From positions 1 through 64,000 of IMG/VR virus record IMGVR_UViG_3300050821_013430: a stretch of 64,000 nt of DNA, one strand, 5' to 3'. Of this stretch, positions 1 to 49,963 are shown in pieces. A program made the translations under genes and the position numbers. The notes below the pieces were generated by a model. The model was given only the letters and a program-made list of their open reading frames with translations. It did no database searches and was not told the DNA's origin. Every line of letters begins with the position of its first letter. Position 1 is the stretch's first letter.

Positions 1-2066
1 ACATACTTAGAAAGACCGCCGAACACTTCGTAAGGCTTATTGCCTAACATTCCTACAAAGATAGTCCAAGCCTCTCCTTGTACTTTGACTTTCTTGATTT
101 CACAGAGTAGTTCTAGGAGTCGTTTGGGGGCGTGGGCTTGTTGAATTTCAACGGGCCGATCGCCCTCCTTGGGAGGAGTGTTACTAATAAGCACACCATC
201 CTTACTTCCTTCTACATAGACGGTAACGCCTTTCAGACCTTGCTTCCAAGCGTTTATGTAGATGTTGCCAACCACATCAGAAGTGGTACCTCGTGGTAAA
301 TTGATGGTAGAACTAATTGAGTGATCAATATATTGTTGTTCGGTGCTTTGAATTTCAATACGTTTCTTCCAATTGATTTCATCAGAGGTAACGAAATAAT
401 TTGGGAGTTTATCAGCATCCGTTAGCCCTTTGGTATCCAAATAATTCTGAACATTAGAATGGAATACCTTGAACTCTTGCCACTTATCTCCTACTACATC
501 AGTAAAATCAGTACGAGAAGCCTTATCATCGTGATTGATTTTCTTACGACGAGTATAAGCATTCCTGAATACCGGCTCAACCCCAGAGGATACATTGTAG
601 CGTGGAAAACTTCCTACCTTACTGAGAATAGAAATAGAGCCAGTAGGAGCTTGTGTTAGAATAGAAATGTTTCTTCTACCATACTGATCCATTTTGTCTT
701 TTATGGATTTAGGCAGTCGCTTGATGAAATCACACTTTTGCTCCTTCTCCTTATCGTAGAGCGGAAACGCACCCCGTTCTTTAGCCAGATCAATAGATGC
801 CTCATATGCCGTATTTCTCAATGTCTTGTAAATTTTATCAACCGTATCAATAGCCTGATCAGTGTCGTATCGAATGCATAATTGCGCCAAAGTATCTGCT
901 AGACCGTGAGTGCCCAATCCAGTTCTGCGACCATTATTTCCAGCATTCCATAGTTTGCCCCACAATTCTTTCTCAGAGGCAGTATCACAAGCGGCCTTGA
1001 TTTTACCAATCAATTCCAATTCAATATCAACAATATTGTCTGCCATTTGTTGGGCAAGCGTTACATCACTAGCAAACTTCTTGAAATCAAACTCAGCATT
1101 TTTACTGAAAGCCTCAATAACATAACCCGTAAGATTGACAGAGATCAACCGACAAGAATCATAAGCGGAAAGAGCTATTTCACTGCATGGATTTGTGGAA
1201 CAAGTTTTAAATTCTGGATAACAATGCGCTGGCAAATTATCCAGCATATTGTCCCACATAATCAAACCCGGATCAGCGGTCTTGGTAGCACTTTCAACAA
1301 TTACATTCCAAACTTCCCGAGCACTAACTTGTTTCCGAATCTTGGGTTCGCCTTCTAGTGGCCACCGTTGTTCGTATTTTTTATCAGCTTCTACCGCTTT
1401 GAGAAACTCGTTAGAAAGTTTGATCGAAATATTGGCGCCCGTTACCTTAGTAACATCGTGTTTCATCGTCGCAAACTGCACTACATCTGGGTGATGAACA
1501 TCCAATGTCACCATCAGGGCTCCTCTTCTTCCCTTTTGCCCTATCATCCTGGTGATATAGGAATATAGATCAGCAAAACTATATGCGCCTGATGTAGTAC
1601 GAGCGGCATTACTTACCTTAGTTCCTTCCGGACGAAGGGAAGAGATATCAATTCCGACACCACATCTTCGCTTGTAAAGTTGTGCCAAATCCAATGCAGA
1701 AAGTATGATGCCTTCGATACTGTCTTTCGGGCTCTCTACTACTACACAATTAGAGGCTGACATTATTTGATATGGATTGCCAATAGCGCTCATCGGAGAG
1801 CCTTGGGCTACAATCCGAGCAAAATGATCCATTGCATCACGATAGACACAAAATCTCTCAGCAGAATCAGCACCATATTTCTCACTATCTATCCTGGCAA
1901 ATTCTTTTGCCAATCGATCGTGCAACGCATCGGGCGTTGGTTCCATAATATTGTCATCCTCATTGCGCAAGGCATACTTATCCACAAACACTTTCGCTGC
2001 CAGCTCGTCGCCATTGAAATAAGTTGTTGATGCTTCCAGTGCTTGAAGGTAAGAGAATCCTGTCAT
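1..2066 (-). CDS. nrdJ: Class II (B12-dependent) ribonucleotide reductase, 3' end runs off the window
   Basis: Not in the ORF track. Read manually from ATG 2066 (MTGFSYLQALEAS...KYAL), open to position 1. Contains SNCVV, GVGIDISSLRP, GRRGALM, TNPCSEI, RRTGLGTHG, QAPTGSIS, SSGVEP and QQYIDHSISSTINLP. No intein or intron seen. Confidence 0.92.
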   Translation of the reverse strand, partial: MTGFSYLQALEASTTYFNGDELAAKVFVDKYALRNEDDNIMEPTPDALHDRLAKEFARIDSEKYGADSAERFCVYRDAMDHFARIVAQGSPMSAIGNPYQIMSASNCVVVESPKDSIEGIILSALDLAQLYKRRCGVGIDISSLRPEGTKVSNAARTTSGAYSFADLYSYITRMIGQKGRRGALMVTLDVHHPDVVQFATMKHDVTKVTGANISIKLSNEFLKAVEADKKYEQRWPLEGEPKIRKQVSAREVWNVIVESATKTADPGLIMWDNMLDNLPAHCYPEFKTCSTNPCSEIALSAYDSCRLISVNLTGYVIEAFSKNAEFDFKKFASDVTLAQQMADNIVDIELELIGKIKAACDTASEKELWGKLWNAGNNGRRTGLGTHGLADTLAQLCIRYDTDQAIDTVDKIYKTLRNTAYEASIDLAKERGAFPLYDKEKEQKCDFIKRLPKSIKDKMDQYGRRNISILTQAPTGSISILSKVGSFPRYNVSSGVEPVFRNAYTRRKKINHDDKASRTDFTDVVGDKWQEFKVFHSNVQNYLDTKGLTDADKLPNYFVTSDEINWKKRIEIQSTEQQYIDHSISSTINLPRGTTSDVVGNIYINAWKQGLKGVTVYVEGSKDGVLISNTPPKEGDRPVEIQQAHAPKRLLELLCEIKKVKVQGEAWTIFVGMLGNKPYEVFGGLSKY

Positions 2067-2111
2067 AATCATCCTTGATTAAGTCGTTGTGATCCGAGCG
2101 AGGGATCGGGT

Positions 2112-3135: not shown

Positions 3136-4116
3136 TTATTTTTTCCTTTGATTTTTGTAGTGTGGAATATTATTCGTTTCGTCAAAATCATATTCCCATA
3201 CTGCCTCAACTTTGAAACCATTCTTCTTCAATAAACTTTCTCTCTTCAATGTTTTTGAGTAAAGAGATTCAAAACTTGTGTTGAGAGCATCATTGATATC
3301 TTTTCCTGCATAAACTTTTGGATTACCGTGCCAAAAATCTCCGTAAAATTCATAGACAGTATTTGTCTTTGGATCAAAACCATCAACAATAAATTTTTTC
3401 TTTCCTAATTTGATGATTACTGTTCTGTGAATATTATCATCTGGTAATCCAATAGCATCGAGCCATAATTTTTCTTTCTTGGATTTACCAACAATACATT
3501 TTGGACAACGCTGTTTATGATTGATATGATTTGCCGGAAGTTGTCTAAATATACCGTGCAGCGGACAAATAATGGATATTTTATCAAACATTCTTGTAAA
3601 TTCAACTAATGAATAATCATAAAAATTATTGTGTATTTTGTTGCCCATCGTTATAAAATAATCTAAATCTTTGCGGGCAGATTTTTTGCAACGGGGGCAT
3701 CCCTGCCCTCCGTTGATATGTTTATCAGGACGTTGCTCAAAATCGCCGTGTATTTTACAAGTGATCAGTATTGGCGCCTTAACACTAACAAACATTACGT
3801 TATCATATAGATAAGTTTCTCCGTGAATACTAACTGCTTTATCAATAAAACTTTGTGTATTATACATAAAACCGCTACAAATTTTACAACCTCTTTTATA
3901 AGACAAATGATCTTTGGGTGCAATAGTGAAATCACCGTGTTTAGGACACGTAAGAATAATCTCTGTCCAACTATTCACATAAACAACCTTAGAATAATCG
4001 AGAGTGTTTCCAAAAATAATACGAGATTTAGTAATAAATTCTTCTTGTGTTTGTTTTTCGGCACTACCTTCTCCTACGATCCATTTGGGTTTGGATTGCG
4101 TGATAGCGCTCTTCAC
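3136..4116 (-). CDS. Putative homing endonuclease: three Zn-binding repeats plus C-terminal Vsr/PD-(D/E)XK-like domain
   Basis: Three repeats of YxYxxV...IxCxxHGxFxxxPxxH...CxxC; C-terminal VDGFDPKTNTVYEFYGDFWHG. Confidence 0.75.
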   Translation of the reverse strand: MKSAITQSKPKWIVGEGSAEKQTQEEFITKSRIIFGNTLDYSKVVYVNSWTEIILTCPKHGDFTIAPKDHLSYKRGCKICSGFMYNTQSFIDKAVSIHGETYLYDNVMFVSVKAPILITCKIHGDFEQRPDKHINGGQGCPRCKKSARKDLDYFITMGNKIHNNFYDYSLVEFTRMFDKISIICPLHGIFRQLPANHINHKQRCPKCIVGKSKKEKLWLDAIGLPDDNIHRTVIIKLGKKKFIVDGFDPKTNTVYEFYGDFWHGNPKVYAGKDINDALNTSFESLYSKTLKRESLLKKNGFKVEAVWEYDFDETNNIPHYKNQRKK

Positions 4117-4371: not shown

Positions 4372-4557
4372 CTATTCATCCTTCTCTAAAACTAATTTCT
4401 TATCTATTAAACGAAATTCTATATCAGCAGTCCAGTTTTTCTTTATGTCTTGCTTGTGGCGTTCATTTGTGATCTCAAATACCAGAAAAAGCCTACCAGT
4501 TTTTTCTTCTAACTCTACTCTCACCGCTTCGCCTACTATTTCTTCAGTAGATTTCAT
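4372..4557 (-). CDS. Hypothetical protein
   Basis: Translationally coupled to the DnaB stop; no motif recognised. Confidence 0.6.
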   Translation of the reverse strand: MKSTEEIVGEAVRVELEEKTGRLFLVFEITNERHKQDIKKNWTADIEFRLIDKKLVLEKDE

Positions 4558-5951
4558 AACTCTAACTCCTCCATCTCTCCTGAGATGTCATAAACGTCAC
4601 TTACTTCCGTAAAATCTGTAGAGGGGGAGTCGCTCGGAGAATCTAACAAGGTAGCACAAGCCAAATTCTTTAGCAAAGCTCCCTTAGTCTTAATGCCTTT
4701 GCGATTTTTGATAATATGCAGGAGTAGATTGGGATGCAACTCTTCATTCTGACGACTTTCAATTTGTATAACTGTCGTAGCGTGGGTCGCTATCGTGGCC
4801 GAACGAGCCAAACGAGCTAATCCAATATTTTCCGATGAATCTTTGGTAGGTGATTTGCGATTCAATTGCACTGCAGTAAATACTGGCAAATTGAATTTTC
4901 TTCCAATGGCGCGAGTTTCATAAGCAATAATGCCTTGCTTCAACCAATCGCTTTCTTCAACCGCTTGATTAGGCTTCATTATACCTAAATAATCGATAAA
5001 GACAGCATCTACATTATATGATACATCGCTAAGAATAGCCTCAATATCATTGGCAGAAGCATCGGGAATATCAACAATCTCAAACTGATAAGGATAGTTG
5101 CTTATGAAATCTAATGCTTGACGAATCTTGTTGGCCTCTTCCTTGCTAACTTGTGCATTCTCAATTTTACGAGAAGGCACTCCGGATAATCTACTGAGCA
5201 AACGATTGAAACAATCGTCATATGGCATTTCCAAAGAAAAATACAAAACATTTTTACCGGGAATGAAATTGTCTTTCATCTCGATTGTATTTTCTTGCAT
5301 CCAAACTTGGATACCCATATTATTGAGCAATAAACTCTTACCGAATCCGGATTCGCCAGCAATAATTACGAAATCTGCACTACCAATCCCGTTTGTCGCT
5401 TGATCTAAAAATGAATAACCAGTTTTGATTTTACTTTCAATAGTTGAATTAGTGCGACGAGCATTGAATTTGTCTCGAAAACTTGGGATGGCTTCTTTTA
5501 GAGTTCGGCGCTCAAAAGATTTGGCACGAGTAATTGAATCAACATTTTGACAAGTTCGTTGTACATCAGTAAATAATGTGGTGTCGTTGAGATCGGCAGT
5601 ATCCAATTTACTTTTCAGTGCGGACAATTGTCGTTCTACATACTTGGCTTTTAGTTTGTCCAAATCATATCGAAATTCTTTTTCGTCATATGATAGGGAT
5701 GAAATGGCACGCCAAACCTCATTGAGATATTCGATTTGAGCGCTATTACCAGACTTAGACATCTTGTCTGTCAGTACCCGTAATGTCGGTGGCTCTTTAT
5801 AGGTTTTGATATATCCAACTACAATATTGGCAAAATTCCAAACATCAGGTGAGAAAATTCGATGATCGCACTCATTGACAAAATCCAATGCGTGCTTCTT
5901 GCTGGAAGTAATGGCCTTGAGAACTGATAAATCTAATTGGTTATATTTCAT
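4554..5951 (-). CDS. dnaB: DnaB-like replicative helicase
   Basis: Walker A GESGFGKS, FSLEM, VFIDYL, VQLNR, IKNRKG. Confidence 0.9.
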   Translation of the reverse strand: MKYNQLDLSVLKAITSSKKHALDFVNECDHRIFSPDVWNFANIVVGYIKTYKEPPTLRVLTDKMSKSGNSAQIEYLNEVWRAISSLSYDEKEFRYDLDKLKAKYVERQLSALKSKLDTADLNDTTLFTDVQRTCQNVDSITRAKSFERRTLKEAIPSFRDKFNARRTNSTIESKIKTGYSFLDQATNGIGSADFVIIAGESGFGKSLLLNNMGIQVWMQENTIEMKDNFIPGKNVLYFSLEMPYDDCFNRLLSRLSGVPSRKIENAQVSKEEANKIRQALDFISNYPYQFEIVDIPDASANDIEAILSDVSYNVDAVFIDYLGIMKPNQAVEESDWLKQGIIAYETRAIGRKFNLPVFTAVQLNRKSPTKDSSENIGLARLARSATIATHATTVIQIESRQNEELHPNLLLHIIKNRKGIKTKGALLKNLACATLLDSPSDSPSTDFTEVSDVYDISGEMEELEL

Positions 5952-9140: not shown

Positions 9141-9929
9141 TTAGCGAGAGAAAAGGTTCTTAAAAACCCCGGTAATTATACTAACAATAAAATTGACAAC
9201 ACCATTCGCGGGAGGATTGACCACGGGGGGAGGGACGGGAGCTGGGATAGGGTCTGGCGCCACAGGATCGGGCACAGGAGCGACTTCGGGAGGGGGTGCG
9301 GGGGTAGGCGCTACCATGGGGTCAGGGCCCCATAAACTCAAATCTGCGGCGACATCGGTATCTACGGCAACACCACCAGGTAGTTGTAATGCAGTTCCAC
9401 CCGCCGTTTGCCAAACTACATCAGTTGTCCAGGGAGCGGGAATGGCGGGAGAAGAGGTATAACTAGCAATCCATAATTTGCATTGAGCAGTAAAATCCGC
9501 AGACGTAAAAGCACAGGCTTTTAGGAAACTGGGATAAGAATAGATTAGCATTTGTCTGCCATCTAATTCGCTATATTTTGCTTGATAGCGATTACAGTAA
9601 TCTCGGACTTGTGCGGCAGTCATTCCACGGGCAACCCAGTCCTGAGGGTAGGGATACTCAATATCGCTTGAGGCTAATTCACCGCCTGCTAGAGAGTAGT
9701 GATATGCTGCTATTTGTTCGGGAATATCCCCAACGATCGGATAAAATACGTGATAAGCCATCACCTTGAGCCCAACAGCCTTGGCGCCAGCAACATTTTG
9801 AGTATAATTAGGATCGTGTTGATTTGAACCGATCCCGCATCTAATAACAACGAAGCTTATCCCCTGTTGCACGCACCAGTCCCAGGGAACTACGGATTGG
9901 ATACTACTGACGTCGATTCCTTTATACAT
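9141..9929 (-). CDS. GH25 muramidase (endolysin) with Pro-rich linker and amphipathic C-terminal helix
   Basis: GIDVS, FVVIR, DPNY..N..GA..VGL.V.AYH, DIE, LWIASY, WQ, VDTD. Confidence 0.85.
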   Translation of the reverse strand: MYKGIDVSSIQSVVPWDWCVQQGISFVVIRCGIGSNQHDPNYTQNVAGAKAVGLKVMAYHVFYPIVGDIPEQIAAYHYSLAGGELASSDIEYPYPQDWVARGMTAAQVRDYCNRYQAKYSELDGRQMLIYSYPSFLKACAFTSADFTAQCKLWIASYTSSPAIPAPWTTDVVWQTAGGTALQLPGGVAVDTDVAADLSLWGPDPMVAPTPAPPPEVAPVPDPVAPDPIPAPVPPPVVNPPANGVVNFIVSIITGVFKNLFSR

Positions 9930-9933
9930 CTAC

Positions 9934-10296
9934 TTATTCCTTTTCTTTTTCTATTTCCGGATGCACGATCACCTTGAAATCGGGATCGTTTTTCGCATCC
10001 TTGAAGACTTCGCGCCAAGTTTCCAAGTCTTGAGTCGTAGGTTTGGTAATACCCTCTAATGCCTTCTTGAAATCCTTCAATTCTTGCCTCTGTTTATCCA
10101 ACATTTTATTGGTCATTAATTCTCTGTTTTCTTCCGGAACAACCGAAGCGATGTCTTCCAATCGACTTAGTTTGATATCTACCGCTTCTACCAATAGTTT
10201 GAGAAATCCCTCAAACGAATTAGTATCCATCATCACCATTAGATGATTGAGATGCGGCAGTTGTTCCTGCATTTTGTAAAATGTTTTGTAATCCAT
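9934..10296 (-). CDS. Hypothetical helical protein
   Basis: 120 aa, coupled to the upstream ORF. Confidence 0.6.
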   Translation of the reverse strand: MDYKTFYKMQEQLPHLNHLMVMMDTNSFEGFLKLLVEAVDIKLSRLEDIASVVPEENRELMTNKMLDKQRQELKDFKKALEGITKPTTQDLETWREVFKDAKNDPDFKVIVHPEIEKEKE

Positions 10297-10481
10297 TAGA
10301 CTTCCTTGATGGCCGAAATTGATGCTATATCAATTATGGTTGATTTGGACATACGAGAAGTACAATTGAGAATTACAAAATCAGCCTCTTGAGTTTCTTT
10401 GAGAGTACCCTCAAACCAATGACCATTTATAAAAATATATATTTCTTTGCCGAAATATGTTGATAGTGTTGTGAAATTCAT
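10296..10481 (-). CDS. Small Sm/LSm-like beta-barrel protein
   Basis: LSTYFGKEIYIFINGHWFEGTL...DFVIL...IIDIASISAI. Confidence 0.6.
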   Translation of the reverse strand: MNFTTLSTYFGKEIYIFINGHWFEGTLKETQEADFVILNCTSRMSKSTIIDIASISAIKEV

Positions 10482-10693
10482 TTTGCTACCTCTTCTGCTG
10501 GTGCGTCATCTGCCATCCAAAATCCTACTACCTTGTCTGCATCTACATAGTGTTTGCAAGACTTCTTAGTACTGAGAACCAGGTGGTTTTCTCCGACACT
10601 GACCAGTTTGCCGGTTAGTGCGGCACTGCTGCCCATAACTTGCAAGTTGATTTCCTTACCTTTTAGATTACCGTGAAATAATGTTGTTTGCAT
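10478..10693 (-). CDS. Small Sm/LSm-like beta-barrel protein
   Basis: LKGKEINLQVMGSSAALTGKLVSVGENHLVL...HYVDADKVVGF. Confidence 0.6.
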   Translation of the reverse strand: MQTTLFHGNLKGKEINLQVMGSSAALTGKLVSVGENHLVLSTKKSCKHYVDADKVVGFWMADDAPAEEVAK

Positions 10694-10698
10694 TGTTA

Positions 10699-10932
10699 TT
10701 ATCCTTGTTTAGTTTCATTTAGTTCATAATGATCAATTTGCGATACTCTAATGGCGACCATTATTCCAGCACACCAATCAGCTTTCATCAAAATGGCAGG
10801 TGAGAAGCCACTATCTTCTGCCATACCTAACTCACCTATAACGGCTTCAACATCGCCAATTAGGCAGCTACCATCAAATGTATGAACTCTGAGATTCTTA
10901 CCTTCTAATCCATCGAAATCTTGCTTTTGCAT
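10699..10932 (-). CDS. Small Sm/LSm-like beta-barrel protein
   Basis: LEGKNLRVHTFDGSCLIGDVEAV...AILM...VAIRVSQIDHYE. Confidence 0.55.
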   Translation of the reverse strand: MQKQDFDGLEGKNLRVHTFDGSCLIGDVEAVIGELGMAEDSGFSPAILMKADWCAGIMVAIRVSQIDHYELNETKQG

Positions 10933-11809
10933 TTACTTTCTCCTGTCTTGTTATATGTCTTGTTATATGTCTTGTTCTATTTGAACCTTCAATAATATTA
11001 AGTTTAGCCGAATATGGCCGCAAATTTTCGAGGGCCCAACATTTCTTGAAATTTTCCTCTTTCATATTTTTATATGGTAAATCGGATTGAGGAATGATAT
11101 GATCTAATTGCCAAGTCCAAGTCGAGGAGTCATTATCATCCCAAGTTTTAGCATTATATCGACCGTGATTTTCCCAAGTCATCCAAAAGTTTTTGTCTTT
11201 CCATTGGCTTTCGATATGAAAAGCTAGACTATCAGGAGTCCAATCCACAAAATCAAGAAAAGAATAATTATTTTTGGAAGAGCCTATTTTGTTCAGAGCG
11301 GCATTCACCATTCTTGAAATATTTACCCTGATTTTATATACTGGATCGTTCTTTTTCTTTTCTCTTTGCCATTTATTATAAGATTGTGTAATTTTCTCTC
11401 TATTATCTTCCCTGTATTGTTTTTTATATCGTTTTGTTCGTTCTCTAATTTGTGGCTGCGCGCGATACTTCTTATCTTTTGCAAGAATTTCTTCTTTATT
11501 ATTACTATAATATGTGCGTTTTCTTATACTAATATAGTTATTGTTTTCTTTCCTATATTCTTTATTATATTGATCTATCGATTCCTTATTTTCAGCATAA
11601 TATTCTTTTTTCTGTGTAATAATATTTTCACTGTTATGAGCATAATAATTTCTATTCTTGGCCAAAATAGTTAATTTATTTTTCTTATAGAAGGCCTGTT
11701 GATTTAGTGCAAGACATTCTTTACATTGACCGGTTAGCCTCCCGGTATCAGATCGAATTCTAAATTCACTATTTTCTTTGGTCTCTTTACACTGAATACA
11801 TTGTTTCAC
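10898..11809 (-). CDS. Free-standing HNH homing endonuclease (family copy 1)
   Basis: CxxC...CxxC, basic helical Y/K/E repeats, WTWQLDHIIPQS...KCWALENLRPYSAKLN. Confidence 0.85.
   Translation of the reverse strand: MKQCIQCKETKENSEFRIRSDTGRLTGQCKECLALNQQAFYKKNKLTILAKNRNYYAHNSENIITQKKEYYAENKESIDQYNKEYRKENNNYISIRKRTYYSNNKEEILAKDKKYRAQPQIRERTKRYKKQYREDNREKITQSYNKWQREKKKNDPVYKIRVNISRMVNAALNKIGSSKNNYSFLDFVDWTPDSLAFHIESQWKDKNFWMTWENHGRYNAKTWDDNDSSTWTWQLDHIIPQSDLPYKNMKEENFKKCWALENLRPYSAKLNIIEGSNRTRHITRHITRQEKVNAKARFRWIRR
10944..10976. repeat. 12-bp tandem repeat (tgtcttgttata, about 2.75 copies) in the HNH gene tail
   Basis: Visible directly; encodes TRHITRHITR. Confidence 0.8.
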
Positions 11810-11811
11810 TG

Positions 11812-13173
11812 TTATTTTCTCCGATCTACTACCGTATTCTGTACAAGTTTTCCAAACTGACTAGACTTTTGGGAAATACGATCCTTTATTTTTTGAGCGG
11901 CGGAAACATTTTCTTCGGTACCAGTTTCTAATTTGAGATTTAGATTACGAGTCTCGTCCTTGATTTTGGATTTTTGCACTAGTTCGCGGGCATCCTTTTT
12001 CAATTGATCTATTCTATTATCAGGAAGCGATAGTCCCGAAAACATTGAATATACTTTCACTACATTTTCTGGAATATCAACTTCATAAATTCCCTTGAAC
12101 ACTCCCTTTGGGGATGAACATAAATCATTTACCATTGCCATTGCATAATTTACACTAGAACTTGGAATTTCTTTCCAAACTTTAGCATTAGCTACGATGA
12201 TCGCTCCTACATATTTGGCTTGTTTCAAATCGAAACCACTAGCTAAAAGATTATTATTTAGATTATCAATCACGGCTTTTGCAATTGACACTTCATCCTT
12301 ATAGTCTGGCACTGTTAGCTCACCATAAACACTTAGTCCCTCACCATCGCACAAAAGTCTGGCAAACTCAGTAGGGTCTAATCCTTTTACGCTAGAGGGC
12401 ATTGCCGAAAAAGTATTGAAAACATCTAGTGGCTCTACAATAGTTTTGTTGGCTACTTGGAAAAATTCCATTTGAGAAACGCCACTTAGAATTGTTTCTA
12501 ACTTAGCATTATCAACGACAATAAGATTAGCGATCTTTTTGTCTCGAGCCATTCCTGCAAGCTTTGATAATGTTTCTAATGCATTAGCTTTTGTTTGCGT
12601 ATCATCTGAGTCCATCGGAAGAACCGTCAAAACTACCAGTGGTTTATTGGTTTCAGTAAGAATATCTACTAGAGTTTCACAAGAACCGGCCCCACTTCCA
12701 CCACCGAGCGATAGACACAAAACATTGACCTGAGAACGAAGCAACTTATCATTGATCATTTGCGCAATATCTGAACGGAAAGTCTCTGCAGCGGCTTTAC
12801 CAAATTCTAAATCTTTTGCTGCGCCACCGAGCCCATATTCTAACAATAACTTATTAGAATCTGGCAAATCAAGAAATTTTAGGTCTTGATTGGCGGTATT
12901 GATTGCTATAGCATCATATCCTAATTTAGAAAAGGAAACAGCAAGTCTCCCACCGGCTTGACCGCTTCCCACTACACCTAAGTTTAGACTTCGCTCTTTC
13001 TTTGCTACAATTTTCGCTGACATTCTCTGCTCCATTTGTTTTGCTTGACTTTGGGCCTTTAAGGCCACTAATTTACCGGCATCGACCGACGCAGGTTCGG
13101 AAACCTCAACGGTAGAAATATCATCCACTACTTGCTCTGGTGTGATTTCTTCGGTAATTGATTTTGCTGTCAT
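11812..13173 (-). CDS. Tubulin/FtsZ-family GTPase (PhuZ/TubZ-like)
   Basis: GVVGSGQAGGR (T1), AINTA, GGAAKD, signature SLGGGSGAG, VVDN, T7-like GLDPTEF. Confidence 0.88.
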   Translation of the reverse strand: MTAKSITEEITPEQVVDDISTVEVSEPASVDAGKLVALKAQSQAKQMEQRMSAKIVAKKERSLNLGVVGSGQAGGRLAVSFSKLGYDAIAINTANQDLKFLDLPDSNKLLLEYGLGGAAKDLEFGKAAAETFRSDIAQMINDKLLRSQVNVLCLSLGGGSGAGSCETLVDILTETNKPLVVLTVLPMDSDDTQTKANALETLSKLAGMARDKKIANLIVVDNAKLETILSGVSQMEFFQVANKTIVEPLDVFNTFSAMPSSVKGLDPTEFARLLCDGEGLSVYGELTVPDYKDEVSIAKAVIDNLNNNLLASGFDLKQAKYVGAIIVANAKVWKEIPSSSVNYAMAMVNDLCSSPKGVFKGIYEVDIPENVVKVYSMFSGLSLPDNRIDQLKKDARELVQKSKIKDETRNLNLKLETGTEENVSAAQKIKDRISQKSSQFGKLVQNTVVDRRK

Positions 13174-13184
13174 TTGTTTTCCTT

Positions 13185-13192
13185 TATATCGG
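13185..13192 (-). promoter_or_regulatory. SSGATATA motif (CCGATATA) upstream of the tubulin gene
   Basis: Same motif recurs in 8 intergenic gaps. Confidence 0.55.
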
Positions 13193-13202
13193 TTGAATCA
13201 AT

Positions 13203-13231
13203 AGTGTAATAAATAATAATTAGAGTGTCAA
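13203..13231 (-). promoter_or_regulatory. Sigma70-type promoter TTGACA-N17-TACACT
   Basis: Perfect -35, 17-bp spacer and 4/6 -10, in the gap upstream of the tubulin gene. Confidence 0.7.
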
Positions 13232-13242
13232 GAGGCATCAAT

Positions 13243-14169
13243 TTATTGTAATGCCCATCTGTTAGTCTCATACCAGCCAACAGTCTTTTCCAGCCGTTCC
13301 TTGAATTTCAATTTAGGAGTCCAATCCAAAGATTTAAGTTTGCTCCCATCCATACTATATCTAAAACCAACATCTGATTTTTCGGTAAAAGAAATCAAAT
13401 GATGTCCACGTCCTAAAATATTGCAAATATGATTGGCAATTTCTAAATTGGAAAATTCTTGCCCTGCCGAAAGATTGTATACCTGCTCTGAATGCTCTTT
13501 TTCTAAGACGGTAAAGAGGGCGGAACAAATCTCGGAAGTATGTAGCCAATCTCGTAATTCTAATCCTTGATTGTACAGGGTAATCGTGGTTTCATCCAAA
13601 ATACTCTTGATGGTATGAGGAATGAAACAATAACTACCCTGCCGAGGGCCAAATCCTTTAGCCAGCCTTACTATAAGGTATGGTAGATTTTGACTTTTTC
13701 CAGCGGCTTGTACCAAAAGTTCGGCCGCTGCTTGAGAGGCCACGAATTTAGTGATGGGAATCAATAAGTCATTTTCTTTGGAAGGATGTGCGTTTTCATC
13801 CGAAAGGCTTCCATATACTTTGCCAGTAGAAAGGTGAATCAATCTTTTTGTTTTCCATCTGAGGCAAGCATCAATAACTTTTTGAGTTCCCAATGCGTTA
13901 GTTTCAATAGCATCTTGCCCCTTAGAAAAAGCTCCGTGAATAACAATATCTGGTCGCTCATATTCAAAAAGAACATCCAAAAAATGTTCATCTAAAACAT
14001 TACCAATATAAAACTGATAATTTTTACTGACATAAAGATTACTAAGTGCTAATGAATTTTTCACTCTATCTACCCCAATAAAAGAATATGGAAGTTTATA
14101 GTGAATAGCTTTTCTTATTAGATTCTCGCATATAAAACTACCAGAACCCGTGATCAAAACTTTCTGCAT
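13243..14169 (-). CDS. dTDP-glucose 4,6-dehydratase (RmlB)-like extended SDR with degenerate catalytic motifs
   Basis: KVLITG...PDIVIH...TNALGT...LST.KVYG...FGPRQ...FIP...RDWLH...YNL...RYSMD.SKL..L.W.P...L.KTV.WY..N backbone. Confidence 0.8.
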   Translation of the reverse strand: MQKVLITGSGSFICENLIRKAIHYKLPYSFIGVDRVKNSLALSNLYVSKNYQFYIGNVLDEHFLDVLFEYERPDIVIHGAFSKGQDAIETNALGTQKVIDACLRWKTKRLIHLSTGKVYGSLSDENAHPSKENDLLIPITKFVASQAAAELLVQAAGKSQNLPYLIVRLAKGFGPRQGSYCFIPHTIKSILDETTITLYNQGLELRDWLHTSEICSALFTVLEKEHSEQVYNLSAGQEFSNLEIANHICNILGRGHHLISFTEKSDVGFRYSMDGSKLKSLDWTPKLKFKERLEKTVGWYETNRWALQ

Positions 14170-15253: not shown

Positions 15254-16018
15254 TCAATCATTTTTCTTTTGATGGCGAGTTCGTCTAATGCCATCTAAAA
15301 TATTTTGTTTTGCGCTCAGTGGGCGAAGATTTTCTAATGCCCAGCATTTCTTAAAATCTTCATCTTCCATTGTTTCGTAGTGAAATTCTGAATGAGGAAT
15401 AATATGATCTATTTGCCAAGTCCAAGTGGAAGGATCATTATCATCCCAGGTTTTAGCATTATATATCCCATGATTTTTAAAATGCATCCAAACGTTCTCA
15501 CCGATCATCTGAGATGCTAAATGATTTAAAAACTCCTGAATTGTATAATCAAGATATTGAATACACGATTCGCCCAATTTAGAGCCACCATTTCTTTTAA
15601 GACCGTAATTAATTGCACTTGACATCAAACATCTAAAAGCGTAAGCAGGATCGTTTTTCTTGCGATCTCTTTCATATTTATTTTTCTGTTCGCGAATAAA
15701 TTCTTTATTTTCCTCTTTATATTTTTTATTATAGATGCTTATAGTTTCTTTATTTTCTTTACGATATTCAGCATATGCTTCTTTATTTTCTTTTTTGTAT
15801 TTTTTCGCGTAAATTTTACGGTCTTCGCTATTTACTTGATAATAATCTTTACCATATTGCCTAATATTTTCTTTATGCTTTTCATAATATTTTTTGTTCT
15901 TGGAATCATGACAATTTTTACAATTGTTTCTATATTTATTTGTATCTTTTCTGAAATAAAATTCATCTAATGATTTATTTAATCCACAAATACAACATTT
16001 TTTAATATTTTCTTGCAT
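15254..16018 (-). CDS. Free-standing HNH homing endonuclease (family copy 2)
   Basis: Start moved to MQENIKKCCICG (ATG 16018) to avoid overlap; WTWQIDHIIPHS...KCWALENLRPLSAKQN. Confidence 0.85.
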   Translation of the reverse strand: MQENIKKCCICGLNKSLDEFYFRKDTNKYRNNCKNCHDSKNKKYYEKHKENIRQYGKDYYQVNSEDRKIYAKKYKKENKEAYAEYRKENKETISIYNKKYKEENKEFIREQKNKYERDRKKNDPAYAFRCLMSSAINYGLKRNGGSKLGESCIQYLDYTIQEFLNHLASQMIGENVWMHFKNHGIYNAKTWDDNDPSTWTWQIDHIIPHSEFHYETMEDEDFKKCWALENLRPLSAKQNILDGIRRTRHQKKND

Positions 16019-16031
16019 TGTATGCCCAAAA

Positions 16032-17153
16032 TTATTCAAACGGAATTTGATCAACAATTTTAGACCAATCATAATGGTCACAGATATTCATTCGTTGTTT
16101 TTCAAGTTCAGCATTCAATAATGAAAAATCTGAATAAGCCTTTCTAAGTTGTTCTATCGCACTTTCCATGTTAGGCATAAACCATTTAGTGCCTCTTTTT
16201 TGTTCCCAATACATACTGGTGGGTTCCGCCTCCACTTCATCACCTTCAATAAGTAATGAGTTATCGGTAGTAAGGAAATCTTTTTGACCGCCATAGTTGG
16301 GACATATATTAACTTTACCGGAAGCGAGACCCTCTAATCCCGGAATATAAAAACACTCTGTATGACTCATAGTAAATACTGCGTCAATACTTCGATATAG
16401 AACAGATATATCATCTATATAATTAGTTATTAACTTTACTTCGGCGTGTTTGGGAAACTGTTTATAAAACGAATTTAAATATTCATTTAAATCTATATCG
16501 AATGTTTGAACGGCTCTTTTAGGTCGTGCCTTTAAAAGTAAACAAACATCATCATCTATTGTAAATGCTTTTCCATAAGCAGTTAATAGTCCAGAAATAT
16601 TTTTTCTCTTATGATTTTGTGCGATATTAGATAGTATTTTAAATTTTTTTTTGGTGGGGAGACTGATAGTCGTGGCTTGTCCAAACTGAGCGCCATTAAT
16701 CCCATGTGAGAGTACTTGCATTTTATTTTTAGGAACACCAGAATTAGCAAATGTTTCCATAGATGATTCAGATGGTGGTAATAATGTATCGCAATATACG
16801 TGCTGTTGAGCAAATCCTGTTGGTAAAGCATTCACTCCGGCCCACTCGTATGACCAAATACCAAAACGATTTTTTTTACTGTGCGAAAGATATCGAGAAA
16901 AATTTTTCATGCAGGTATAACTAATACACGCGTCATAATTAGGGCCCGGCTGATTTCCATACATTTTCCCACTTGGATTACCATCACTATATCCAATTAA
17001 ATATGGCATTAAATCTCGTGGTAAATGATCTATGCCATCGGTAGAGTATAACTTTACATCATGTTGTTTTTTAAGTAGGGCGCGGGCCATTTCTCTACCG
17101 ATCACTCCCCAACTATGATTGGCTCCTAAAAATTGTCTAATTAATATTTTCAT
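16032..17153 (-). CDS. GT-B glycosyltransferase (GT4-like)
   Basis: HKRKNI, SHTECFYIPGLEGLASG (Ex7E), NYGGQKDF, YDW at the C-terminus. Confidence 0.82.
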   Translation of the reverse strand: MKILIRQFLGANHSWGVIGREMARALLKKQHDVKLYSTDGIDHLPRDLMPYLIGYSDGNPSGKMYGNQPGPNYDACISYTCMKNFSRYLSHSKKNRFGIWSYEWAGVNALPTGFAQQHVYCDTLLPPSESSMETFANSGVPKNKMQVLSHGINGAQFGQATTISLPTKKKFKILSNIAQNHKRKNISGLLTAYGKAFTIDDDVCLLLKARPKRAVQTFDIDLNEYLNSFYKQFPKHAEVKLITNYIDDISVLYRSIDAVFTMSHTECFYIPGLEGLASGKVNICPNYGGQKDFLTTDNSLLIEGDEVEAEPTSMYWEQKRGTKWFMPNMESAIEQLRKAYSDFSLLNAELEKQRMNICDHYDWSKIVDQIPFE

Positions 17154-36458: not shown

Positions 36459-36899
36459 CTATTTTCTTCCCAATTGATGTATTTTCATTACTATCGCACC
36501 CCTCGGGGCTGTCAAACGCGATGACCACCGTTGATTGATAGCGACATGACCTTTTGCATCCCGTTTATTACGCCTCTTACGACAATTATTATTGGCCTTG
36601 CATAATGAATTCTCATAGTAAAACCATACTATTCGGAGTTTTGGCACCAATTGTTTCAAATGTTTTACTACCACTCTACGACGAGCAGACCATCCACACC
36701 ATAAATCACCTACATAAACATCAAATCCATTTTTGAGTGCTATGGCCACCTTTTTTCGTCGATCAATGCCAGATTGGCCCCTATCACTTAGTCCTTCATC
36801 AAAAAATTTAGCCACTGGATGAGACTTTTGCATTGTGTTTAGAAACCAAGATTTACCCGAGCCGCATAGACCAATAACGATTGTGAGAGTTCCGACCAT
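36459..36899 (-). CDS. Small basic P-loop kinase-like protein
   Basis: LTIVIGLCGSGKS Walker A; Arg/Lys rich. Confidence 0.6.
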   Translation of the reverse strand: MVGTLTIVIGLCGSGKSWFLNTMQKSHPVAKFFDEGLSDRGQSGIDRRKKVAIALKNGFDVYVGDLWCGWSARRRVVVKHLKQLVPKLRIVWFYYENSLCKANNNCRKRRNKRDAKGHVAINQRWSSRLTAPRGAIVMKIHQLGRK

Positions 36900-44054: not shown

Positions 44055-44746
44055 TAGGTAGCCTTCTTTCGATGACGTGTTCGTCTAACACCATCCAGTA
44101 AATTTTGTTTGGCACTCAGTGGTCGAAGATTTTCGAGTGCCCAACATTTCTTGAAATTTTCATCTTCCATAGAAGTATAAGGAAGATCGGATTGTGGAGT
44201 AATATGATCGATCTGCCAAGTCCAAGTAGCGGGATCGTTGTCGTCCCACGTTTTGACATTGTATGGGCCACGATTTCCCCAATTCATCCAAGCATTATGG
44301 CCAACCCATTGACTCTCAATATGAGCCATAACTTCTGATATAGGATTAGGAAGGTAAGTTTTGACCGATTTCCCTTTTTTGGAAGAACCGGCCCTTTTGA
44401 GATCAGCAGATACGCGCCTAGAAATATCCTGCCTCATAGCAAAAGAAGGATCCTTAGACCTTCTTTTCTTTTCTGTTTCTCTCCGTGAAACCCTAATGGT
44501 CTCTATATTCTGATTGTAGTATGCTTTCTTAGCCTCTTTGGTACGTTCATAATAGTTTTTCGCGGAGGCCTTGATGCGTTCTTTATTTGTTTCACGATAC
44601 GTTTTGAAGTATTCATGTCTAACTTCGCTAATAGATTCTTTATGTTCGTTTCGATATTCTATAAGATATGAGAGCCTGCACTCACGACACTGGCATCCGT
44701 GGTATTTCTCTTTCTCCAATCCGCAATCTTTACAAATGATCAACAT
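44054..44746 (-). CDS. Free-standing HNH homing endonuclease (family copy 3)
   Basis: CKDC...CREC; WTWQIDHITPQS...KCWALENLRPLSAKQN. Confidence 0.85.
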   Translation of the reverse strand: MLIICKDCGLEKEKYHGCQCRECRLSYLIEYRNEHKESISEVRHEYFKTYRETNKERIKASAKNYYERTKEAKKAYYNQNIETIRVSRRETEKKRRSKDPSFAMRQDISRRVSADLKRAGSSKKGKSVKTYLPNPISEVMAHIESQWVGHNAWMNWGNRGPYNVKTWDDNDPATWTWQIDHITPQSDLPYTSMEDENFKKCWALENLRPLSAKQNLLDGVRRTRHRKKAT

Positions 44747-48925: not shown

Positions 48926-49963
48926 TTAGAGGCTTGCTTCAATTGTCTGGGGAATAGTGTGCCTGACTTGCCTAGCACCTTCCGAGATGTTTTGTTTGGC
49001 ATTTAGAGGCCGCAAGTTTTCTAATGCCCAGCATTTCTGAAACGCTTCATCCGCCATTGAGGCATAAATAAACTCACTATGAGGAACAATATGGTCTATG
49101 TGCCACTTCCAGGTGGCAGAATCGTTATCATCCCAAGTGTTTTTCCTATAATGCCCCCAATTATCCCAGGTCATCCACGGCTCGAACTGTTTTTCGAGAT
49201 GATCTTTGAGTTCGTGCATCGTATAGGGTAAGTAATCATTGATAGAATGGTTTCTGACGCTCGTTGCATCTCTAAGTCCCCTATGAATGGCTTTAGAAAC
49301 AACTTTCCTGAGTTTGCGAATGCGTTTGAGATTTTCTTCATCAACGTGGGGGATTATATTGTGTTTGACGCAGTAATCTTGAACATTGGATTTGTGTATG
49401 CCAATAAGCCTGCCAATCTGTGCAGAGTTCCAGCCCCGCCATTTTAGATCACGTATTTGTTGCCCAATTTCTTCGGTAATTTTGCCGGAACAATTGGAAT
49501 TTGAGCTTTTGAGGCCGTGTTGCTTGCAAAAATTCCTGATAGTCGCTTCACCCAAGCCAGTAATTTCAGCGATTTTTGCTCGCCCATATCCTTGGGCCAC
49601 TAGGTCAATGATTTGATGTTTTAGTTCCAAAGCGAGGCGCGTTTCTATTAGCCTACCATCAACGAAAATCCCTTTTCGCTTACAAAAACGAGCAACTGAG
49701 GATTCAGCAAGATCAAACAATATGGCTATTTCGGCCGTGCCCGTTTTTTGAGCATATAGACTAATTATTTTGTCGCCCATTTCTGGAGTGATTTTGACGT
49801 TTCTCTTGATCCCATATTTGGCGAATATCTTACTGACCGATTTGATATTGATGAGAATAGCATCAGCTATCTTGTCTATTGATAGACCCTGCGAGCGTAA
49901 GGCTAAAACCTTGTCTTCAATTTCTTTGGTTAGAGTGGTTCTACGGCGCTTTTGTTGTTCCAT
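48926..49963 (-). CDS. Free-standing HNH homing endonuclease with four HTH repeats (family copy 4)
   Basis: Repeated I..L...G.....IA...G HTH units; WKWHIDHIVPHS...KCWALENLRPLNAKQN. Confidence 0.85.
   Translation of the reverse strand: MEQQKRRRTTLTKEIEDKVLALRSQGLSIDKIADAILINIKSVSKIFAKYGIKRNVKITPEMGDKIISLYAQKTGTAEIAILFDLAESSVARFCKRKGIFVDGRLIETRLALELKHQIIDLVAQGYGRAKIAEITGLGEATIRNFCKQHGLKSSNSNCSGKITEEIGQQIRDLKWRGWNSAQIGRLIGIHKSNVQDYCVKHNIIPHVDEENLKRIRKLRKVVSKAIHRGLRDATSVRNHSINDYLPYTMHELKDHLEKQFEPWMTWDNWGHYRKNTWDDNDSATWKWHIDHIVPHSEFIYASMADEAFQKCWALENLRPLNAKQNISEGARQVRHTIPQTIEASL

What the first reader, a model, noticed from the sequence alone, without database searches (positions are those of the whole stretch)
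11812..13173. Tubulin-family GTPase with long terminal extensions and two candidate promoters
Seen: intact T1, T4 (GGGSGAG) and T7-like loops, about 60 aa of N-terminal extension and about 70 aa of charged C-terminal tail. It is preceded by both TTGACA-N17-TACACT and the GATATA motif. Established: PhuZ spindles are best known in nucleus-forming phages, and TubZ in partition systems. This window instead shows a sigma factor and bacterial-type DnaB/DnaC, with no recognisable chimallin, TubR or centromere repeats. Inference: a phage cytoskeleton in a different lineage, expressed in two phases.
Basis: partly seen in the sequence, partly recalled or inferred. Interest (0 to 1): 0.6.

Follow-up and report, generated by a model that had tools for sequence, protein, structure and literature searches.

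The report
TubZ-like tubulin of chimallin-less megaphages
The gene is an intact tubulin/FtsZ-type GTPase, closest in fold to plasmid TubZ and not to the phage-nucleus tubulin PhuZ; it is a highly conserved gene of a widespread group of 430-500 kb phages that have neither a phage-nucleus shell protein nor their own multisubunit RNA polymerase, so it points to an unstudied kind of phage cytoskeleton.

Summary
Observation confirmed. Window 11812-13173 (-) encodes a 453-aa tubulin/FtsZ-superfamily protein with intact T1, T4 (GGGSGAG) and T7 (LD266-x-x-E269) loops. It has an N-terminal extension of about 61 aa and a 69-aa basic tail. Both upstream motifs are present.

The fold is TubZ-type: TubZ Z 40.8, CetZ 37, FtsZ 30-33, and PhuZ is not among the top 50 entries. 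In a tree the protein sits in its own clade, apart from PhuZ.

The window lies in a 472,749-bp myovirus genome with one tubulin gene. Profile searches found no chimallin, multisubunit RNAP, integrase, ParA or FtsA-like gene. Five complete relatives (433-481 kb) also lack chimallin and RNAP.

More than 1,100 orthologue clusters of about 452 aa exist. Gene order is conserved (epimerase, tubulin, lysin, UvsW, DnaC-like, DnaB). The tubulin is the most conserved gene of the block, and its last 28 residues are as conserved as the GTPase core.

Most likely it is a GTP-driven filament that organises the infected cell through a partner docked on the tail. That function is inferred. "Two-phase expression" is untested, and only the GATATA motif recurs widely among orthologues.

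I rate it a new variant of a known kind, interest about 0.6.

The parts
11812..13173 (-). Complete ORF of the 453-aa tubulin/FtsZ-superfamily GTPase (P0001), stop codon included
12991..13173 (-). N-terminal extension, residues 1-61. Residues 1-31 are acidic (net -7) and modelled without regular structure at low confidence (pLDDT 55-58), with a conserved E..(V)DD motif. Residues 32-54 form a basic helix.
   Evidence: AF2 model. Mean conservation over 63 distinct orthologues is 0.51 for residues 1-31 and 0.74 for 32-60. Many positions are invariant in the close clade.
12409..12990 (-). GTPase domain, residues 62-255. T1 GSGQAGG is at 12949-12969, T4 GGGSGAG at 12685-12705, and T6 VDNAKL covers residues 220-225.
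   Evidence: Pfam PF00091; motif alignment; invariant G71, G74, G158, G159 and D221 in 64 family members
12364..12387 (-). T7 loop, residues 263-270 (KGLDPTEF). D266 and E269 correspond to FtsZ D209 and D212.
   Evidence: D266 in 53/53 rows, D/E at 269 in 52/53
12022..12408 (-). TubZ-type C-terminal (activation) domain, residues 256-384
   Evidence: PF22453; structural alignment to TubZ covering model residues 49/52 to 405/419
11815..12021 (-). C-terminal tail, residues 385-453, net +6. It has a long helix (385-413), a linker, and then the conserved terminal peptide 426-453 (nt 11815-11898) ending FGK...VDRRK.
   Evidence: the last 28 residues are as conserved as the GTPase core (0.83 against 0.82)
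13203..13231 (-). Sigma-70-like site TTGACA-N17-TACACT, 58 nt upstream of the ATG
   Evidence: It is one of only 13 such sites within 100 nt upstream of 717 ORFs in the genome, against 4.2 expected. It was not found in the 80 IMG/VR orthologue loci.
13185..13190 (-). GATATA motif at -17, followed by the Shine-Dalgarno-like AAGGA (13180-13184)
   Evidence: GATATA lies upstream of the orthologue in 49 of 80 loci
13243..14169 (-). Upstream neighbour, an NAD-dependent sugar epimerase/dehydratase. It sits immediately upstream of the tubulin in 78 of 81 related loci.
10898..11809 (-). HNH/endonuclease-VII-like ORF inserted directly downstream of the tubulin. It is absent from the closest relative and is context, not part of the system.

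Best explanation
The gene encodes a functional tubulin/FtsZ-superfamily GTPase of TubZ-like architecture. It defines its own virus-only family and is a conserved, strongly constrained gene of a lineage of 430-500 kb tailed phages (myoviruses). These phages lack chimallin and a phage multisubunit RNA polymerase.

Shown:
- The fold, the intact nucleotide-binding and T7 catalytic residues, the family distribution, the gene order and the conservation pattern.

Inferred:
- With GTP it assembles head-to-tail into filaments in the infected cell.
- The conserved basic C-terminal peptide sits behind a more variable helix and linker, the same layout as the FtsZ and TubZ tails. It docks the filament onto a partner or cargo.
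- The N-terminal helix and acidic motif modulate assembly or a second contact.
- The gene has its own promoter-like elements and lies at the head of the replication module (UvsW, DnaC-like, DnaB, sigma factor, RNR). It shares the proximal GATATA motif with dnaB. So it is probably made together with the replication proteins.
- Its role is then to organise space in the infected cell: positioning the replicating 470-kb genome or the assembly sites of very large capsids, without a protein shell.
For: Identity and fold:
- Pfam Tubulin plus TubZ-like_C.
- AF2 model with pLDDT 85.4 and pTM 0.77.
- Foldseek: TubZ-Bt E 1e-25, CetZ2 3e-23.
- VIA: TubZ-Bc Z 40.8 (345 aa, rmsd 2.4), TubZ-Bt 39.7, CetZ2 37.2, c-st TubZ 33.2, FtsZ 30-33.

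Catalytic machinery: T1, T4 and T7 are intact.

Family:
- 1,138 clusters at 90% identity were detected. The 120 best listed are 446-462 aa, 65-78% identical over 99-100% of the length, on contigs up to 496 kb.
- 1,174 clusters at 50% identity reach E <= 1e-3.
- The ESM Atlas clusters are 87-100% viral.
- No close copy was found in one genome for each of 185,579 bacterial and archaeal species.

Constraint:
- Median identity is 65.6%, against 34-58% for every neighbour, DnaB (45%) included.
- The terminal 28 aa are as conserved as the core.
- Several family members carry inteins inside the T4 loop.

Context:
- There is a single tubulin gene.
- No chimallin or multisubunit RNAP, with working positive controls.
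- No integrase, ParA or FtsA-like gene.
- A tail sheath gene is present.
- Conserved order: epimerase, tubulin, lysin, UvsW, DnaC-like, DnaB.
- GATATA lies at -17 both here and before dnaB.
Against: - There is no direct evidence of polymerisation. The homodimer modelling job gave no verdict.
- No partner for the tail was identified, and the host is unknown.
- No transcript data were available.
- Gene order in phages is inherited, so lying next to the replication module is weak evidence of function.
- Chimallin absence rests on sequence profiles and one tblastn. A structurally analogous shell protein is not excluded.
- IMG/VR flags three of the five relatives examined as 'provirus'. If that is real, it would favour a partition role.
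Confidence: 0.5

Rival explanations
1. It is a TubZ-type partition motor. During a carrier or pseudolysogenic state the huge genome is kept as an extrachromosomal replicon and pushed apart by treadmilling filaments. An unrecognised DNA-binding adaptor binds the basic C-terminal tail, as TubR does.
For: The closest solved structures are plasmid TubZ/RepX. The flexible basic tail resembles the TubR-binding tail of TubZ (established knowledge: Ni et al. 2010). Clostridium phage c-st uses TubZ in this way (Oliva et al. 2012, cited). Three relatives are flagged 'provirus' by IMG/VR.
Against: Genuine tubZ loci have a small gene directly upstream (L092, L093). Here the upstream gene is an epimerase in 78 of 81 loci. 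No iteron array lies near the gene. No integrase or ParA was found. No copies occur in the bacterial or archaeal genomes searched, so no resident prophage or plasmid copies were seen. One relative has direct terminal repeats, like a virion genome.
Confidence: 0.15
2. It manipulates the host. The phage tubulin co-assembles with host FtsZ or competes with it, or uses its conserved C-terminal peptide to capture FtsZ-binding proteins. This blocks division or reshapes the cell so that very large virions can be made.
For: It has the FtsZ-like layout of core, variable linker and conserved terminal peptide. One distant family member is fused to a PilM/FtsA-like actin-fold domain (P0228). CetZ, a cell-shape tubulin, is the second-closest structure.
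Against: The tail has no clear match to the FtsZ C-terminal motif. TIGR00065 FtsZ scores 50.5 bits against a cut-off of 295, and there is no FtsZ_C domain. The host is unknown. P0228 is only about 30% identical, and its genomic context was not examined.
Confidence: 0.15
3. It is a scaffold for sugar or envelope enzymes. The filament positions phage glycosyltransferases, nucleotide-sugar enzymes or the lysin, much as FtsZ and MreB organise wall synthesis.
For: An epimerase lies immediately upstream in 78 of 81 loci, and glycosyltransferases lie further upstream. A lysin (GH25, Amidase_2 or CHAP) lies nearby even in distant members. One member is a GT1-tubulin fusion of 812 aa (P0143).
Against: There is only a single fusion, which could be a lost stop codon between neighbouring genes. 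Conserved gene order may simply be inherited. The lysin is missing from that position in many loci (found in 30 of 81).
Confidence: 0.1
4. It is a PhuZ-like spindle that centres a replication compartment built from a shell protein unrelated in sequence to chimallin.
For: The genome is very large. There is a weak partial match to the PhuZ family phrog_4733 (E 4e-9, residues 127-214). Many large ORFs have unknown function.
Against: No chimallin was found by two profiles and tblastn. There is no multisubunit RNAP, which accompanies the phage nucleus in all Chimalliviridae (Prichard et al., PMC10299810). Instead the phage carries a sigma factor, which implies use of host RNAP in the cytoplasm. The tail is basic, not the acidic PhuZ tail. 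It lies outside the PhuZ clade.
Confidence: 0.1

Closest known systems
TubZ / RepX of Bacillus plasmids (pBtoxis, pXO1; PDB 2XKA, 3M89, 4EI7)
   Same: It gives the best sequence and structure matches: phmmer E 1.4e-12 and Z 40.8 and 39.7 over 345-361 residues, including the long C-terminal helix. The T6 'DNAKL' is shared with RepX. Both have a T7 D-x-x-D/E and a flexible basic C-terminal tail.
   Different: Identity is only 20-22%. There is no tubR gene and no tubC iterons. It lies on a 473-kb tailed-phage genome rather than a plasmid. It has a conserved 61-aa N-terminal extension. Its tree position relative to TubZ is unresolved.
PhuZ of nucleus-forming jumbo phages (phiKZ gp039, 201phi2-1 gp59, Goslar)
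   Same: Both are phage-encoded tubulins in very large myovirus genomes. There is a weak partial hit to phrog_4733.
   Different: The sequence E-value to PhuZ structures is 0.14-0.18. PhuZ-type models reach only about 1e-13 in BFVD and are not among the top 50 PDB entries. PhuZ forms a separate, long-branched clade. There is no PF22334 domain. The tail is basic rather than acidic. No chimallin or multisubunit RNAP partners exist. tblastn against 50,697 phage records finds nothing at E <= 1, whereas phiKZ PhuZ finds 194 records.
CetZ (archaeal cell-shape tubulins; PDB 4B45, 4B46, 3ZID)
   Same: It is the second-closest group by sequence (E 1.3e-10) and by structure (Z 35-37). It is also the nearest cellular cluster in the ESM Atlas.
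   Different: CetZ is archaeal and chromosomal. No CetZ_C domain was reported. CetZ could not be placed in the tree because no referenced sequence was available.
TubZ of Clostridium phage c-st and the FtsZ/tubulin-like protein of Bacillus phage G
   Same: Both are non-PhuZ tubulins of phages. Phage G is a 498-kb phage without a described nucleus.
   Different: In the tree they group with PhuZ and a Pontibacillus plasmid protein, not with the megaphage clade. They are 358-376 aa and lack the extensions. tblastn shows no detectable similarity.

Membership tests
Tubulin/FtsZ superfamily | GTPase domain with the G-box/T4 signature GGG(T/S)G(T/S)G and the T1 loop | tested here: met
   PF00091 scores 46.9 bits against a cut-off of 33. 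T1 GSGQAGG and T4 GGGSGAG align with FtsZ, TubZ and PhuZ.
Tubulin/FtsZ superfamily | T7 loop with acidic residues that complete the active site of the next subunit | tested here: met
   LD266-P-T-E269 aligns with FtsZ D209/D212. D266 is present in 53/53 rows and D/E at 269 in 52/53.
Tubulin/FtsZ superfamily | GTP-dependent polymerisation into protofilaments | not testable with these tools
   The homodimer modelling job returned no verdict. A biochemical assay is needed.
TubZ (type III partition, TubZRC) | TubZ-type fold: C-terminal domain plus a long C-terminal helix and a flexible tail | tested here: met
   PF22453 scores 26.4 bits against a cut-off of 26. Z is 40.8 and 39.7 to TubZ, covering model residues 49/52 to 405/419.
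TubZ (type III partition, TubZRC) | An adjacent tubR gene (small DNA-binding adaptor) in the same operon | tested here: not met
   The upstream gene is an epimerase in 78 of 81 loci. Downstream lie a lysin, small ORFs or an HNH gene. Genuine tubZ loci L092 and L093 have a small ORF of about 110 aa directly upstream. None of the small neighbouring ORFs matches a PHROG family.
TubZ (type III partition, TubZRC) | tubC centromere: an array of short iterons next to the operon | tested here: not met
   The intergenic region is only 69 nt. The only tandem array nearby (12 bp x 3, 10944-10980) lies inside the HNH ORF.
TubZ (type III partition, TubZRC) | Membership of the TubZ/RepX clade in a phylogeny | tested here: inconclusive
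   In the quick ML tree TubZ-Bc and the RepX-like protein lie near the megaphage clade, but through nodes with 29-38% support.
PhuZ (Chimalliviridae spindle tubulin) | Membership of the PhuZ clade and the PhuZ C-terminal domain (PF22334) | tested here: not met
   PhuZ is monophyletic (SH-aLRT 100) and separate from the megaphage clade (SH-aLRT 90). PF22334 matches phiKZ PhuZ but not this protein.
PhuZ (Chimalliviridae spindle tubulin) | Co-occurrence with chimallin and the phage multisubunit RNA polymerases | tested here: not met
   phrog_4795, PF25677, phrog_3015 and phrog_3295 give no hit in G000 or in five complete relatives. phiKZ is found at 1.8e-232, 1.5e-252 and 1.8e-127.
PhuZ (Chimalliviridae spindle tubulin) | An acidic C-terminal tail that inserts into the neighbouring subunit | tested here: not met
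   The tail 385-453 has net charge +6 and ends in DRRK. The definition of the feature comes from Kraemer et al. 2012 (established knowledge).
FtsZ | Equivalog-level match and the FtsZ_C domain | tested here: not met
   TIGR00065 scores 50.5 bits against a cut-off of 295.2. PF12327 is not reported.
CetZ | CetZ_C domain and an archaeal chromosomal context | tested here: not met
   PF21011 was not reported at E <= 1. The gene lies in a tailed-phage genome.

The most novel reading that the evidence does not exclude
This family may be the filament of a previously unrecognised kind of phage cytoskeleton. It would be a TubZ-like polymer that organises replication and assembly of roughly half-megabase genomes in the open cytoplasm, with no chimallin shell. 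It would couple to cargo or to host division or membrane proteins through a conserved basic C-terminal peptide and an N-terminal module. It belongs to a large virus-only radiation of tubulins (hundreds of clusters) that is as diverse as, and separate from, PhuZ.
Probability: 0.35. Interest if true: 0.78.

Novelty: new variant of a known kind. Interest (0 to 1): 0.6.

Why it matters
Phage tubulins are currently understood through two models: PhuZ spindles that centre the chimallin nucleus, and TubZ partition of plasmid-like prophages. Here a third tubulin family is abundant and strongly conserved. [quoted passage not shown]

If it polymerises, it shows that cytoskeletal organisation of infection is not tied to the phage nucleus. 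It would also give a handle on how half-megabase genomes and very large capsids are handled inside a bacterium. The conserved terminal peptides are ready-made baits for finding the partner.

The family also adds a deep, virus-only branch to the tubulin/FtsZ/TubZ/CetZ radiation. The held literature contains no description of it; databases only auto-label it 'cell division GTPase FtsZ'.

Tried and rejected
- Homodimer modelling with complex prediction scored 0.00, with no verdict. It is not evidence either way.
- megablast and tblastn of the gene against 50,697 phage records found nothing, even at E = 1. tblastn with B. cereus TubZ against phages also found nothing.
- The search for related loci with the broad alignment A1 failed because no block was conserved enough. 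With the single protein it found one locus. The close alignment A2 worked.
- A genome-contig scan with A2 found no cellular or prophage copy.
- A second scan with the RNR found only short or MAG contigs (Legionellales, Chitinophagales). I take these as possibly mis-binned phage DNA, so the host stays unresolved.
- The careful IQ-TREE search did not finish in two runs of about 290 s each. Only the quick tree with SH-aLRT support is reported, and no AU test was run.
- CetZ, archaeal FtsZ, BtubA/B and eukaryotic tubulins could not be put into the tree because no referenced sequences were available. Their relation rests on PDB sequence and structure scores only.
- The idea that the tail is a membrane-targeting amphipathic helix was dropped. 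The hydrophobic moment is 0.4-0.6 with negative mean hydrophobicity, which is unremarkable.
- The near-identity of the promoter region in L104 was first read as constraint. I rejected that reading because the whole segment is 98-100% identical.
- PHROG and Pfam scans of the conserved unknown neighbours (orf343, orf203, orf136 and the small ORFs) gave nothing.
Full report
**1. What is at the coordinates**

The ORF at window 11812..13173 on the minus strand encodes 453 aa (P0001). It matches Pfam Tubulin (PF00091, E 5e-12, above the curated cut-off) and TubZ-like_C (PF22453, just above its cut-off). It matches the PhuZ family phrog_4733 only weakly and partially (E 4e-9, residues 127-214). NCBIfam's FtsZ equivalog scores 50.5 bits against a cut-off of 295.

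I aligned the protein with E. coli FtsZ, plasmid TubZ/RepX-like proteins, phage c-st TubZ, the phage G tubulin-like protein and five PhuZ proteins. The alignment shows:
- T1 is GSGQAGG (residues 69-75).
- T4 is GGGSGAG (157-163).
- T6 is VDNAKL (220-225), shared with RepX.
- T7 is KGLD266-P-T-E269-F, aligned with FtsZ NVD209-F-A-D212. D266 is invariant in all 53 rows, and position 269 is acidic in 52.

The core begins at about residue 62, so the N-terminal extension is about 61 aa. The tail after the C-terminal domain is 69 aa with net charge +6. The one refinement is that the DNAKL segment is T6 and the T7 loop lies 45 residues further on.

**2. The upstream motifs**

TTGACA-N17-TACACT lies at 13231..13203. 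It is the only match in the window, against 0.01 expected. GATATA lies at 13190..13185, 17 nt before the ATG, followed by AAGGA.

Across the whole genome, GATATA is the most enriched hexamer upstream of ORFs (53 observed, 10.4 expected). It peaks sharply at -14 to -17 (17 occurrences against about 0.8 expected), and dnaB (4554..5951) also carries it at -17. Full sigma-70-like sites are rare: 13 lie within 100 nt upstream of 717 ORFs, against 4.2 expected, and the tubulin gene has one of them.

Among 80 IMG/VR orthologue loci, 49 have GATATA upstream of the tubulin. It is typically GTGATATAAT overlapping the stop codon of the epimerase gene, at -24 to -42. None of the 80 has the TTGACA-N17-TACACT type. 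The nearest subclade (L104, L105, L106) has the longer intergenic region with sigma-70-like sites. However, L104 is 98-100% identical in DNA over that whole segment, so this agreement is recent ancestry and not constraint.

Both motifs are therefore real and non-random, and the gene seems to have its own promoter in most lineages.

**3. Structure and relatives**

An AlphaFold2 model built on 64 homologues has pLDDT 85.4 and pTM 0.77. Residues 1-31 have no regular structure and low confidence (pLDDT 55-58). There is a helix at 32-54, the tubulin body at 65-384, a long helix at 385-413 and two short terminal helices.

| Comparison | TubZ (Bacillus) | CetZ | c-st TubZ | FtsZ | PhuZ |
|---|---|---|---|---|---|
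| Foldseek vs PDB | E 1e-25 (Bt), 9e-24 (Bc) | 3e-23 | not in the listed rows | about 1e-21 | not in the listed rows |
| VIA-align | Z 40.8 (4EI7, 345 aa, rmsd 2.4), 39.7 (2XKA) | Z 35-37 | Z 33 | Z 30-33 | no entry in the top 50 |
| Sequence vs PDB | RepX 1.4e-12; TubZ-Bt 1e-7 | 1.3e-10 | 3e-5 | 2e-7 | 0.14-0.18 |

I built a quick maximum-likelihood tree (53 rows, 405 columns, LG+C20). The ~450-aa megaphage proteins form one clade (SH-aLRT 90). PhuZ forms another (100, on a stem of about 3.9 substitutions per site), which joins c-st TubZ and the phage G and Pontibacillus proteins. Classical TubZ/RepX lie near the megaphage clade, but through unsupported nodes. The careful search did not finish, and CetZ could not be included. 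The protein does not nest in PhuZ.

**4. The genome**

The window is the first 64 kb of a 472,749-bp IMG/VR virus record, which CheckV estimates as 100% complete. Coding density under the standard code is 93%. Findings:
- One tubulin gene.
- A tail sheath gene.
- A sigma factor, DnaB, a DnaC/IstB-like ATPase, a UvsW-like helicase, RNR and a GH25 lysin.
- No chimallin, by tblastn with phiKZ gp054 or by the profiles phrog_4795 and PF25677.
- No multisubunit RNAP, by phrog_3015 and phrog_3295. These same profiles find the phiKZ genes at 1e-127 to 1e-252 and also hit cellular RNAPs.
- The same absences in five complete relatives of 433-481 kb, one of which has direct terminal repeats.
- No tyrosine integrase, ParA/CbiA or FtsA-type protein.

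**5. The family**

The word-indexed search found 1,138 clusters. The best 120 are 65-78% identical over 99-100% of the length, are 446-462 aa long, and lie on contigs up to 496 kb. The exhaustive search found 1,174 clusters at 50% identity with E <= 1e-3, and 153 with E <= 1e-30.

ESM Atlas neighbours are several clusters of 50-219 members that are 87-100% viral. The nearest cellular cluster is archaeal CetZ. BFVD holds a 66%-identical 'uncultured Caudovirales phage' protein. No close copy occurs in the representative genomes of 185,579 prokaryotic species or in 50,697 deposited phage genomes. Only weak matches to Firmicutes plasmid TubZ-like genes occur in PLSDB.

Gene order is conserved. The epimerase lies immediately upstream in 78 of 81 loci. 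A UvsW-like helicase lies downstream in 69, then the DnaC-like gene (56) and DnaB (51), and a membrane-anchored 343-aa protein lies upstream in 62. The tubulin is the most conserved gene of the block, at 65.6% median identity against 34-58% for its neighbours.

Within 63 distinct orthologues the conservation pattern is:

| Region | Residues | Mean conservation |
|---|---|---|
| Acidic N-terminus | 1-31 | 0.51 |
| N-terminal helix | 32-60 | 0.74 |
| GTPase core | 61-255 | 0.82 |
| Helix after the C-terminal domain | 385-413 | 0.67 |
| Terminal peptide | 426-453 | 0.83 |

The terminal peptide is thus as conserved as the GTPase core. This layout of core, variable spacer and conserved terminal peptide is the one that FtsZ and TubZ use to dock partners (established knowledge).

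Some longer family members carry inteins inserted inside the T4 signature. One is fused to a GT1 glycosyltransferase, one to a PilM/FtsA-like domain and one to a Cds6 NTF2-like domain.

**6. Interpretation**

Shown: an intact tubulin of TubZ-like fold, viral in distribution and strongly constrained. It lies in a lineage of roughly half-megabase myoviruses that have no chimallin and no phage RNAP.

Inferred: it assembles with GTP and uses its conserved termini to engage a partner, organising replication or assembly in the cytoplasm. It is probably co-expressed with the replication module. I put about 0.5 on this general mechanism. The rivals are:
- Partition in a carrier state (0.15). The fold and basic tail favour it. 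The missing tubR, tubC, integrase and ParA, and the absence from cellular genomes, count against it.
- Host division or shape manipulation (0.15).
- A scaffold for glycan or envelope enzymes (0.10). The epimerase, glycosyltransferase and lysin linkage and one fusion suggest it.
- A PhuZ-like spindle around an unrecognised shell (0.10).

**7. Novelty**

Tubulins in phages are known. Al-Shayeb et al. (PMC7162821) mention 'tubulin homologues (PhuZ)' in huge phages, and phage G has a CetZ-like tubulin (PMC12484599). Iyer et al. (PMC7824862) speak of two FtsZ/tubulin representatives in jumbo phages.

I found no description in the held literature of this clade, of its separation from PhuZ, of its conserved extensions, or of its occurrence without chimallin. 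I classify it as a new variant of a known kind.

**8. Limits**

- The host is unknown.
- There is no expression or polymerisation evidence.
- Chimallin absence is judged by sequence only.
- The tree is a quick search without CetZ.
- Three relatives are flagged 'provirus' by IMG/VR, which I could not evaluate.

Noticed in passing
window 10700-12984, compared with L104 (1963-6010): There is a mosaic tract. The window and its closest relative L104 are 98-100% identical in DNA from 15212 down to about 12984, which covers orf343, the epimerase, the promoter region and the first ~63 codons (the N-extension). Identity then drops to 60-83% through the tubulin core and tail. The HNH ORF and a 77-aa ORF are absent from L104. 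Identity returns to 98.8% at 10694..10046. The breakpoint falls at the boundary between the N-extension and the core, next to a homing-endonuclease-like gene, which suggests co-conversion or a modular swap of the tubulin core.
   Followed up: partly
window 10898-11809 and 15254-16081 (both - strand): These are two paralogous HNH/endonuclease-VII-like ORFs (phrog_2340, phrog_1035) with near-identical C-terminal motifs. Both are absent from the closest relative L104. Each sits beside a gene that is divergent from L104 (the tubulin core, and the glycosyltransferase at 16032-17153). More endonuclease-like ORFs lie at 3136-4116, 48926-49963 and 50721-51650.
   Followed up: partly
whole genome G000; in the window, for example 4554-5951, 36459-36899, 44054-44746 and 48926-49963: About 19 ORFs have (C/G)GGATATA only 10-18 nt before the start codon, often with no Shine-Dalgarno sequence in between. 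If GATATA is a -10-like element, these mRNAs would be leaderless or nearly so. In the major sister clade the motif reads TGATATAAT, which looks like an extended -10.
   Followed up: partly
family members P0166, P0169, P0177, P0184, P0206, P0216, P0257 (metagenomic): Several carry inteins with LAGLIDADG homing endonucleases inside the tubulin gene. In five of them the insertion is exactly within the T4 signature (GGGG|C...). In relatives of the window phage the neighbouring epimerase and UvsW genes also carry inteins.
   Followed up: partly
P0143 (locus L091 5001-7439), P0228, P0251: Three domain fusions occur in the family: GT1 glycosyltransferase with tubulin (812 aa, in the same gene order as the window), tubulin with a PilM/FtsA-like actin-fold domain (818 aa), and tubulin with a Cds6 NTF2-like domain (752 aa).
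   Followed up: partly
window 10296-10932 (- strand): Three tandem small ORFs (61, 71 and 77 aa) lie downstream of the tubulin/HNH pair. The first two are conserved in the nearest relatives, and the 71-aa homologue in L104 gives a weak DUF6897 hit. By eye they look like small beta-barrel (Sm-like) proteins. There is no PHROG match.
   Followed up: no
window 10944-10980: A 12-bp tandem repeat (TGTCTTGTTATA, 3 copies) lies inside the 3' end of the HNH ORF and encodes a TRHI repeat. It is not a centromere-like array.
   Followed up: yes
window 3-2072 (- strand), contig start: The RNR large-subunit gene runs off the start of the record, so the linear record is probably a permuted or cut circle. 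Its nearest relatives in genome collections lie on short or MAG contigs labelled Legionellales and Chitinophagales, which may be mis-binned phage DNA.
   Followed up: no
window 9141-9929 (- strand): The GH25 lysin has a long proline-rich C-terminal region and a hydrophobic end. In other lineages the lysin at this position is replaced by Amidase_2 or CHAP enzymes.
   Followed up: no
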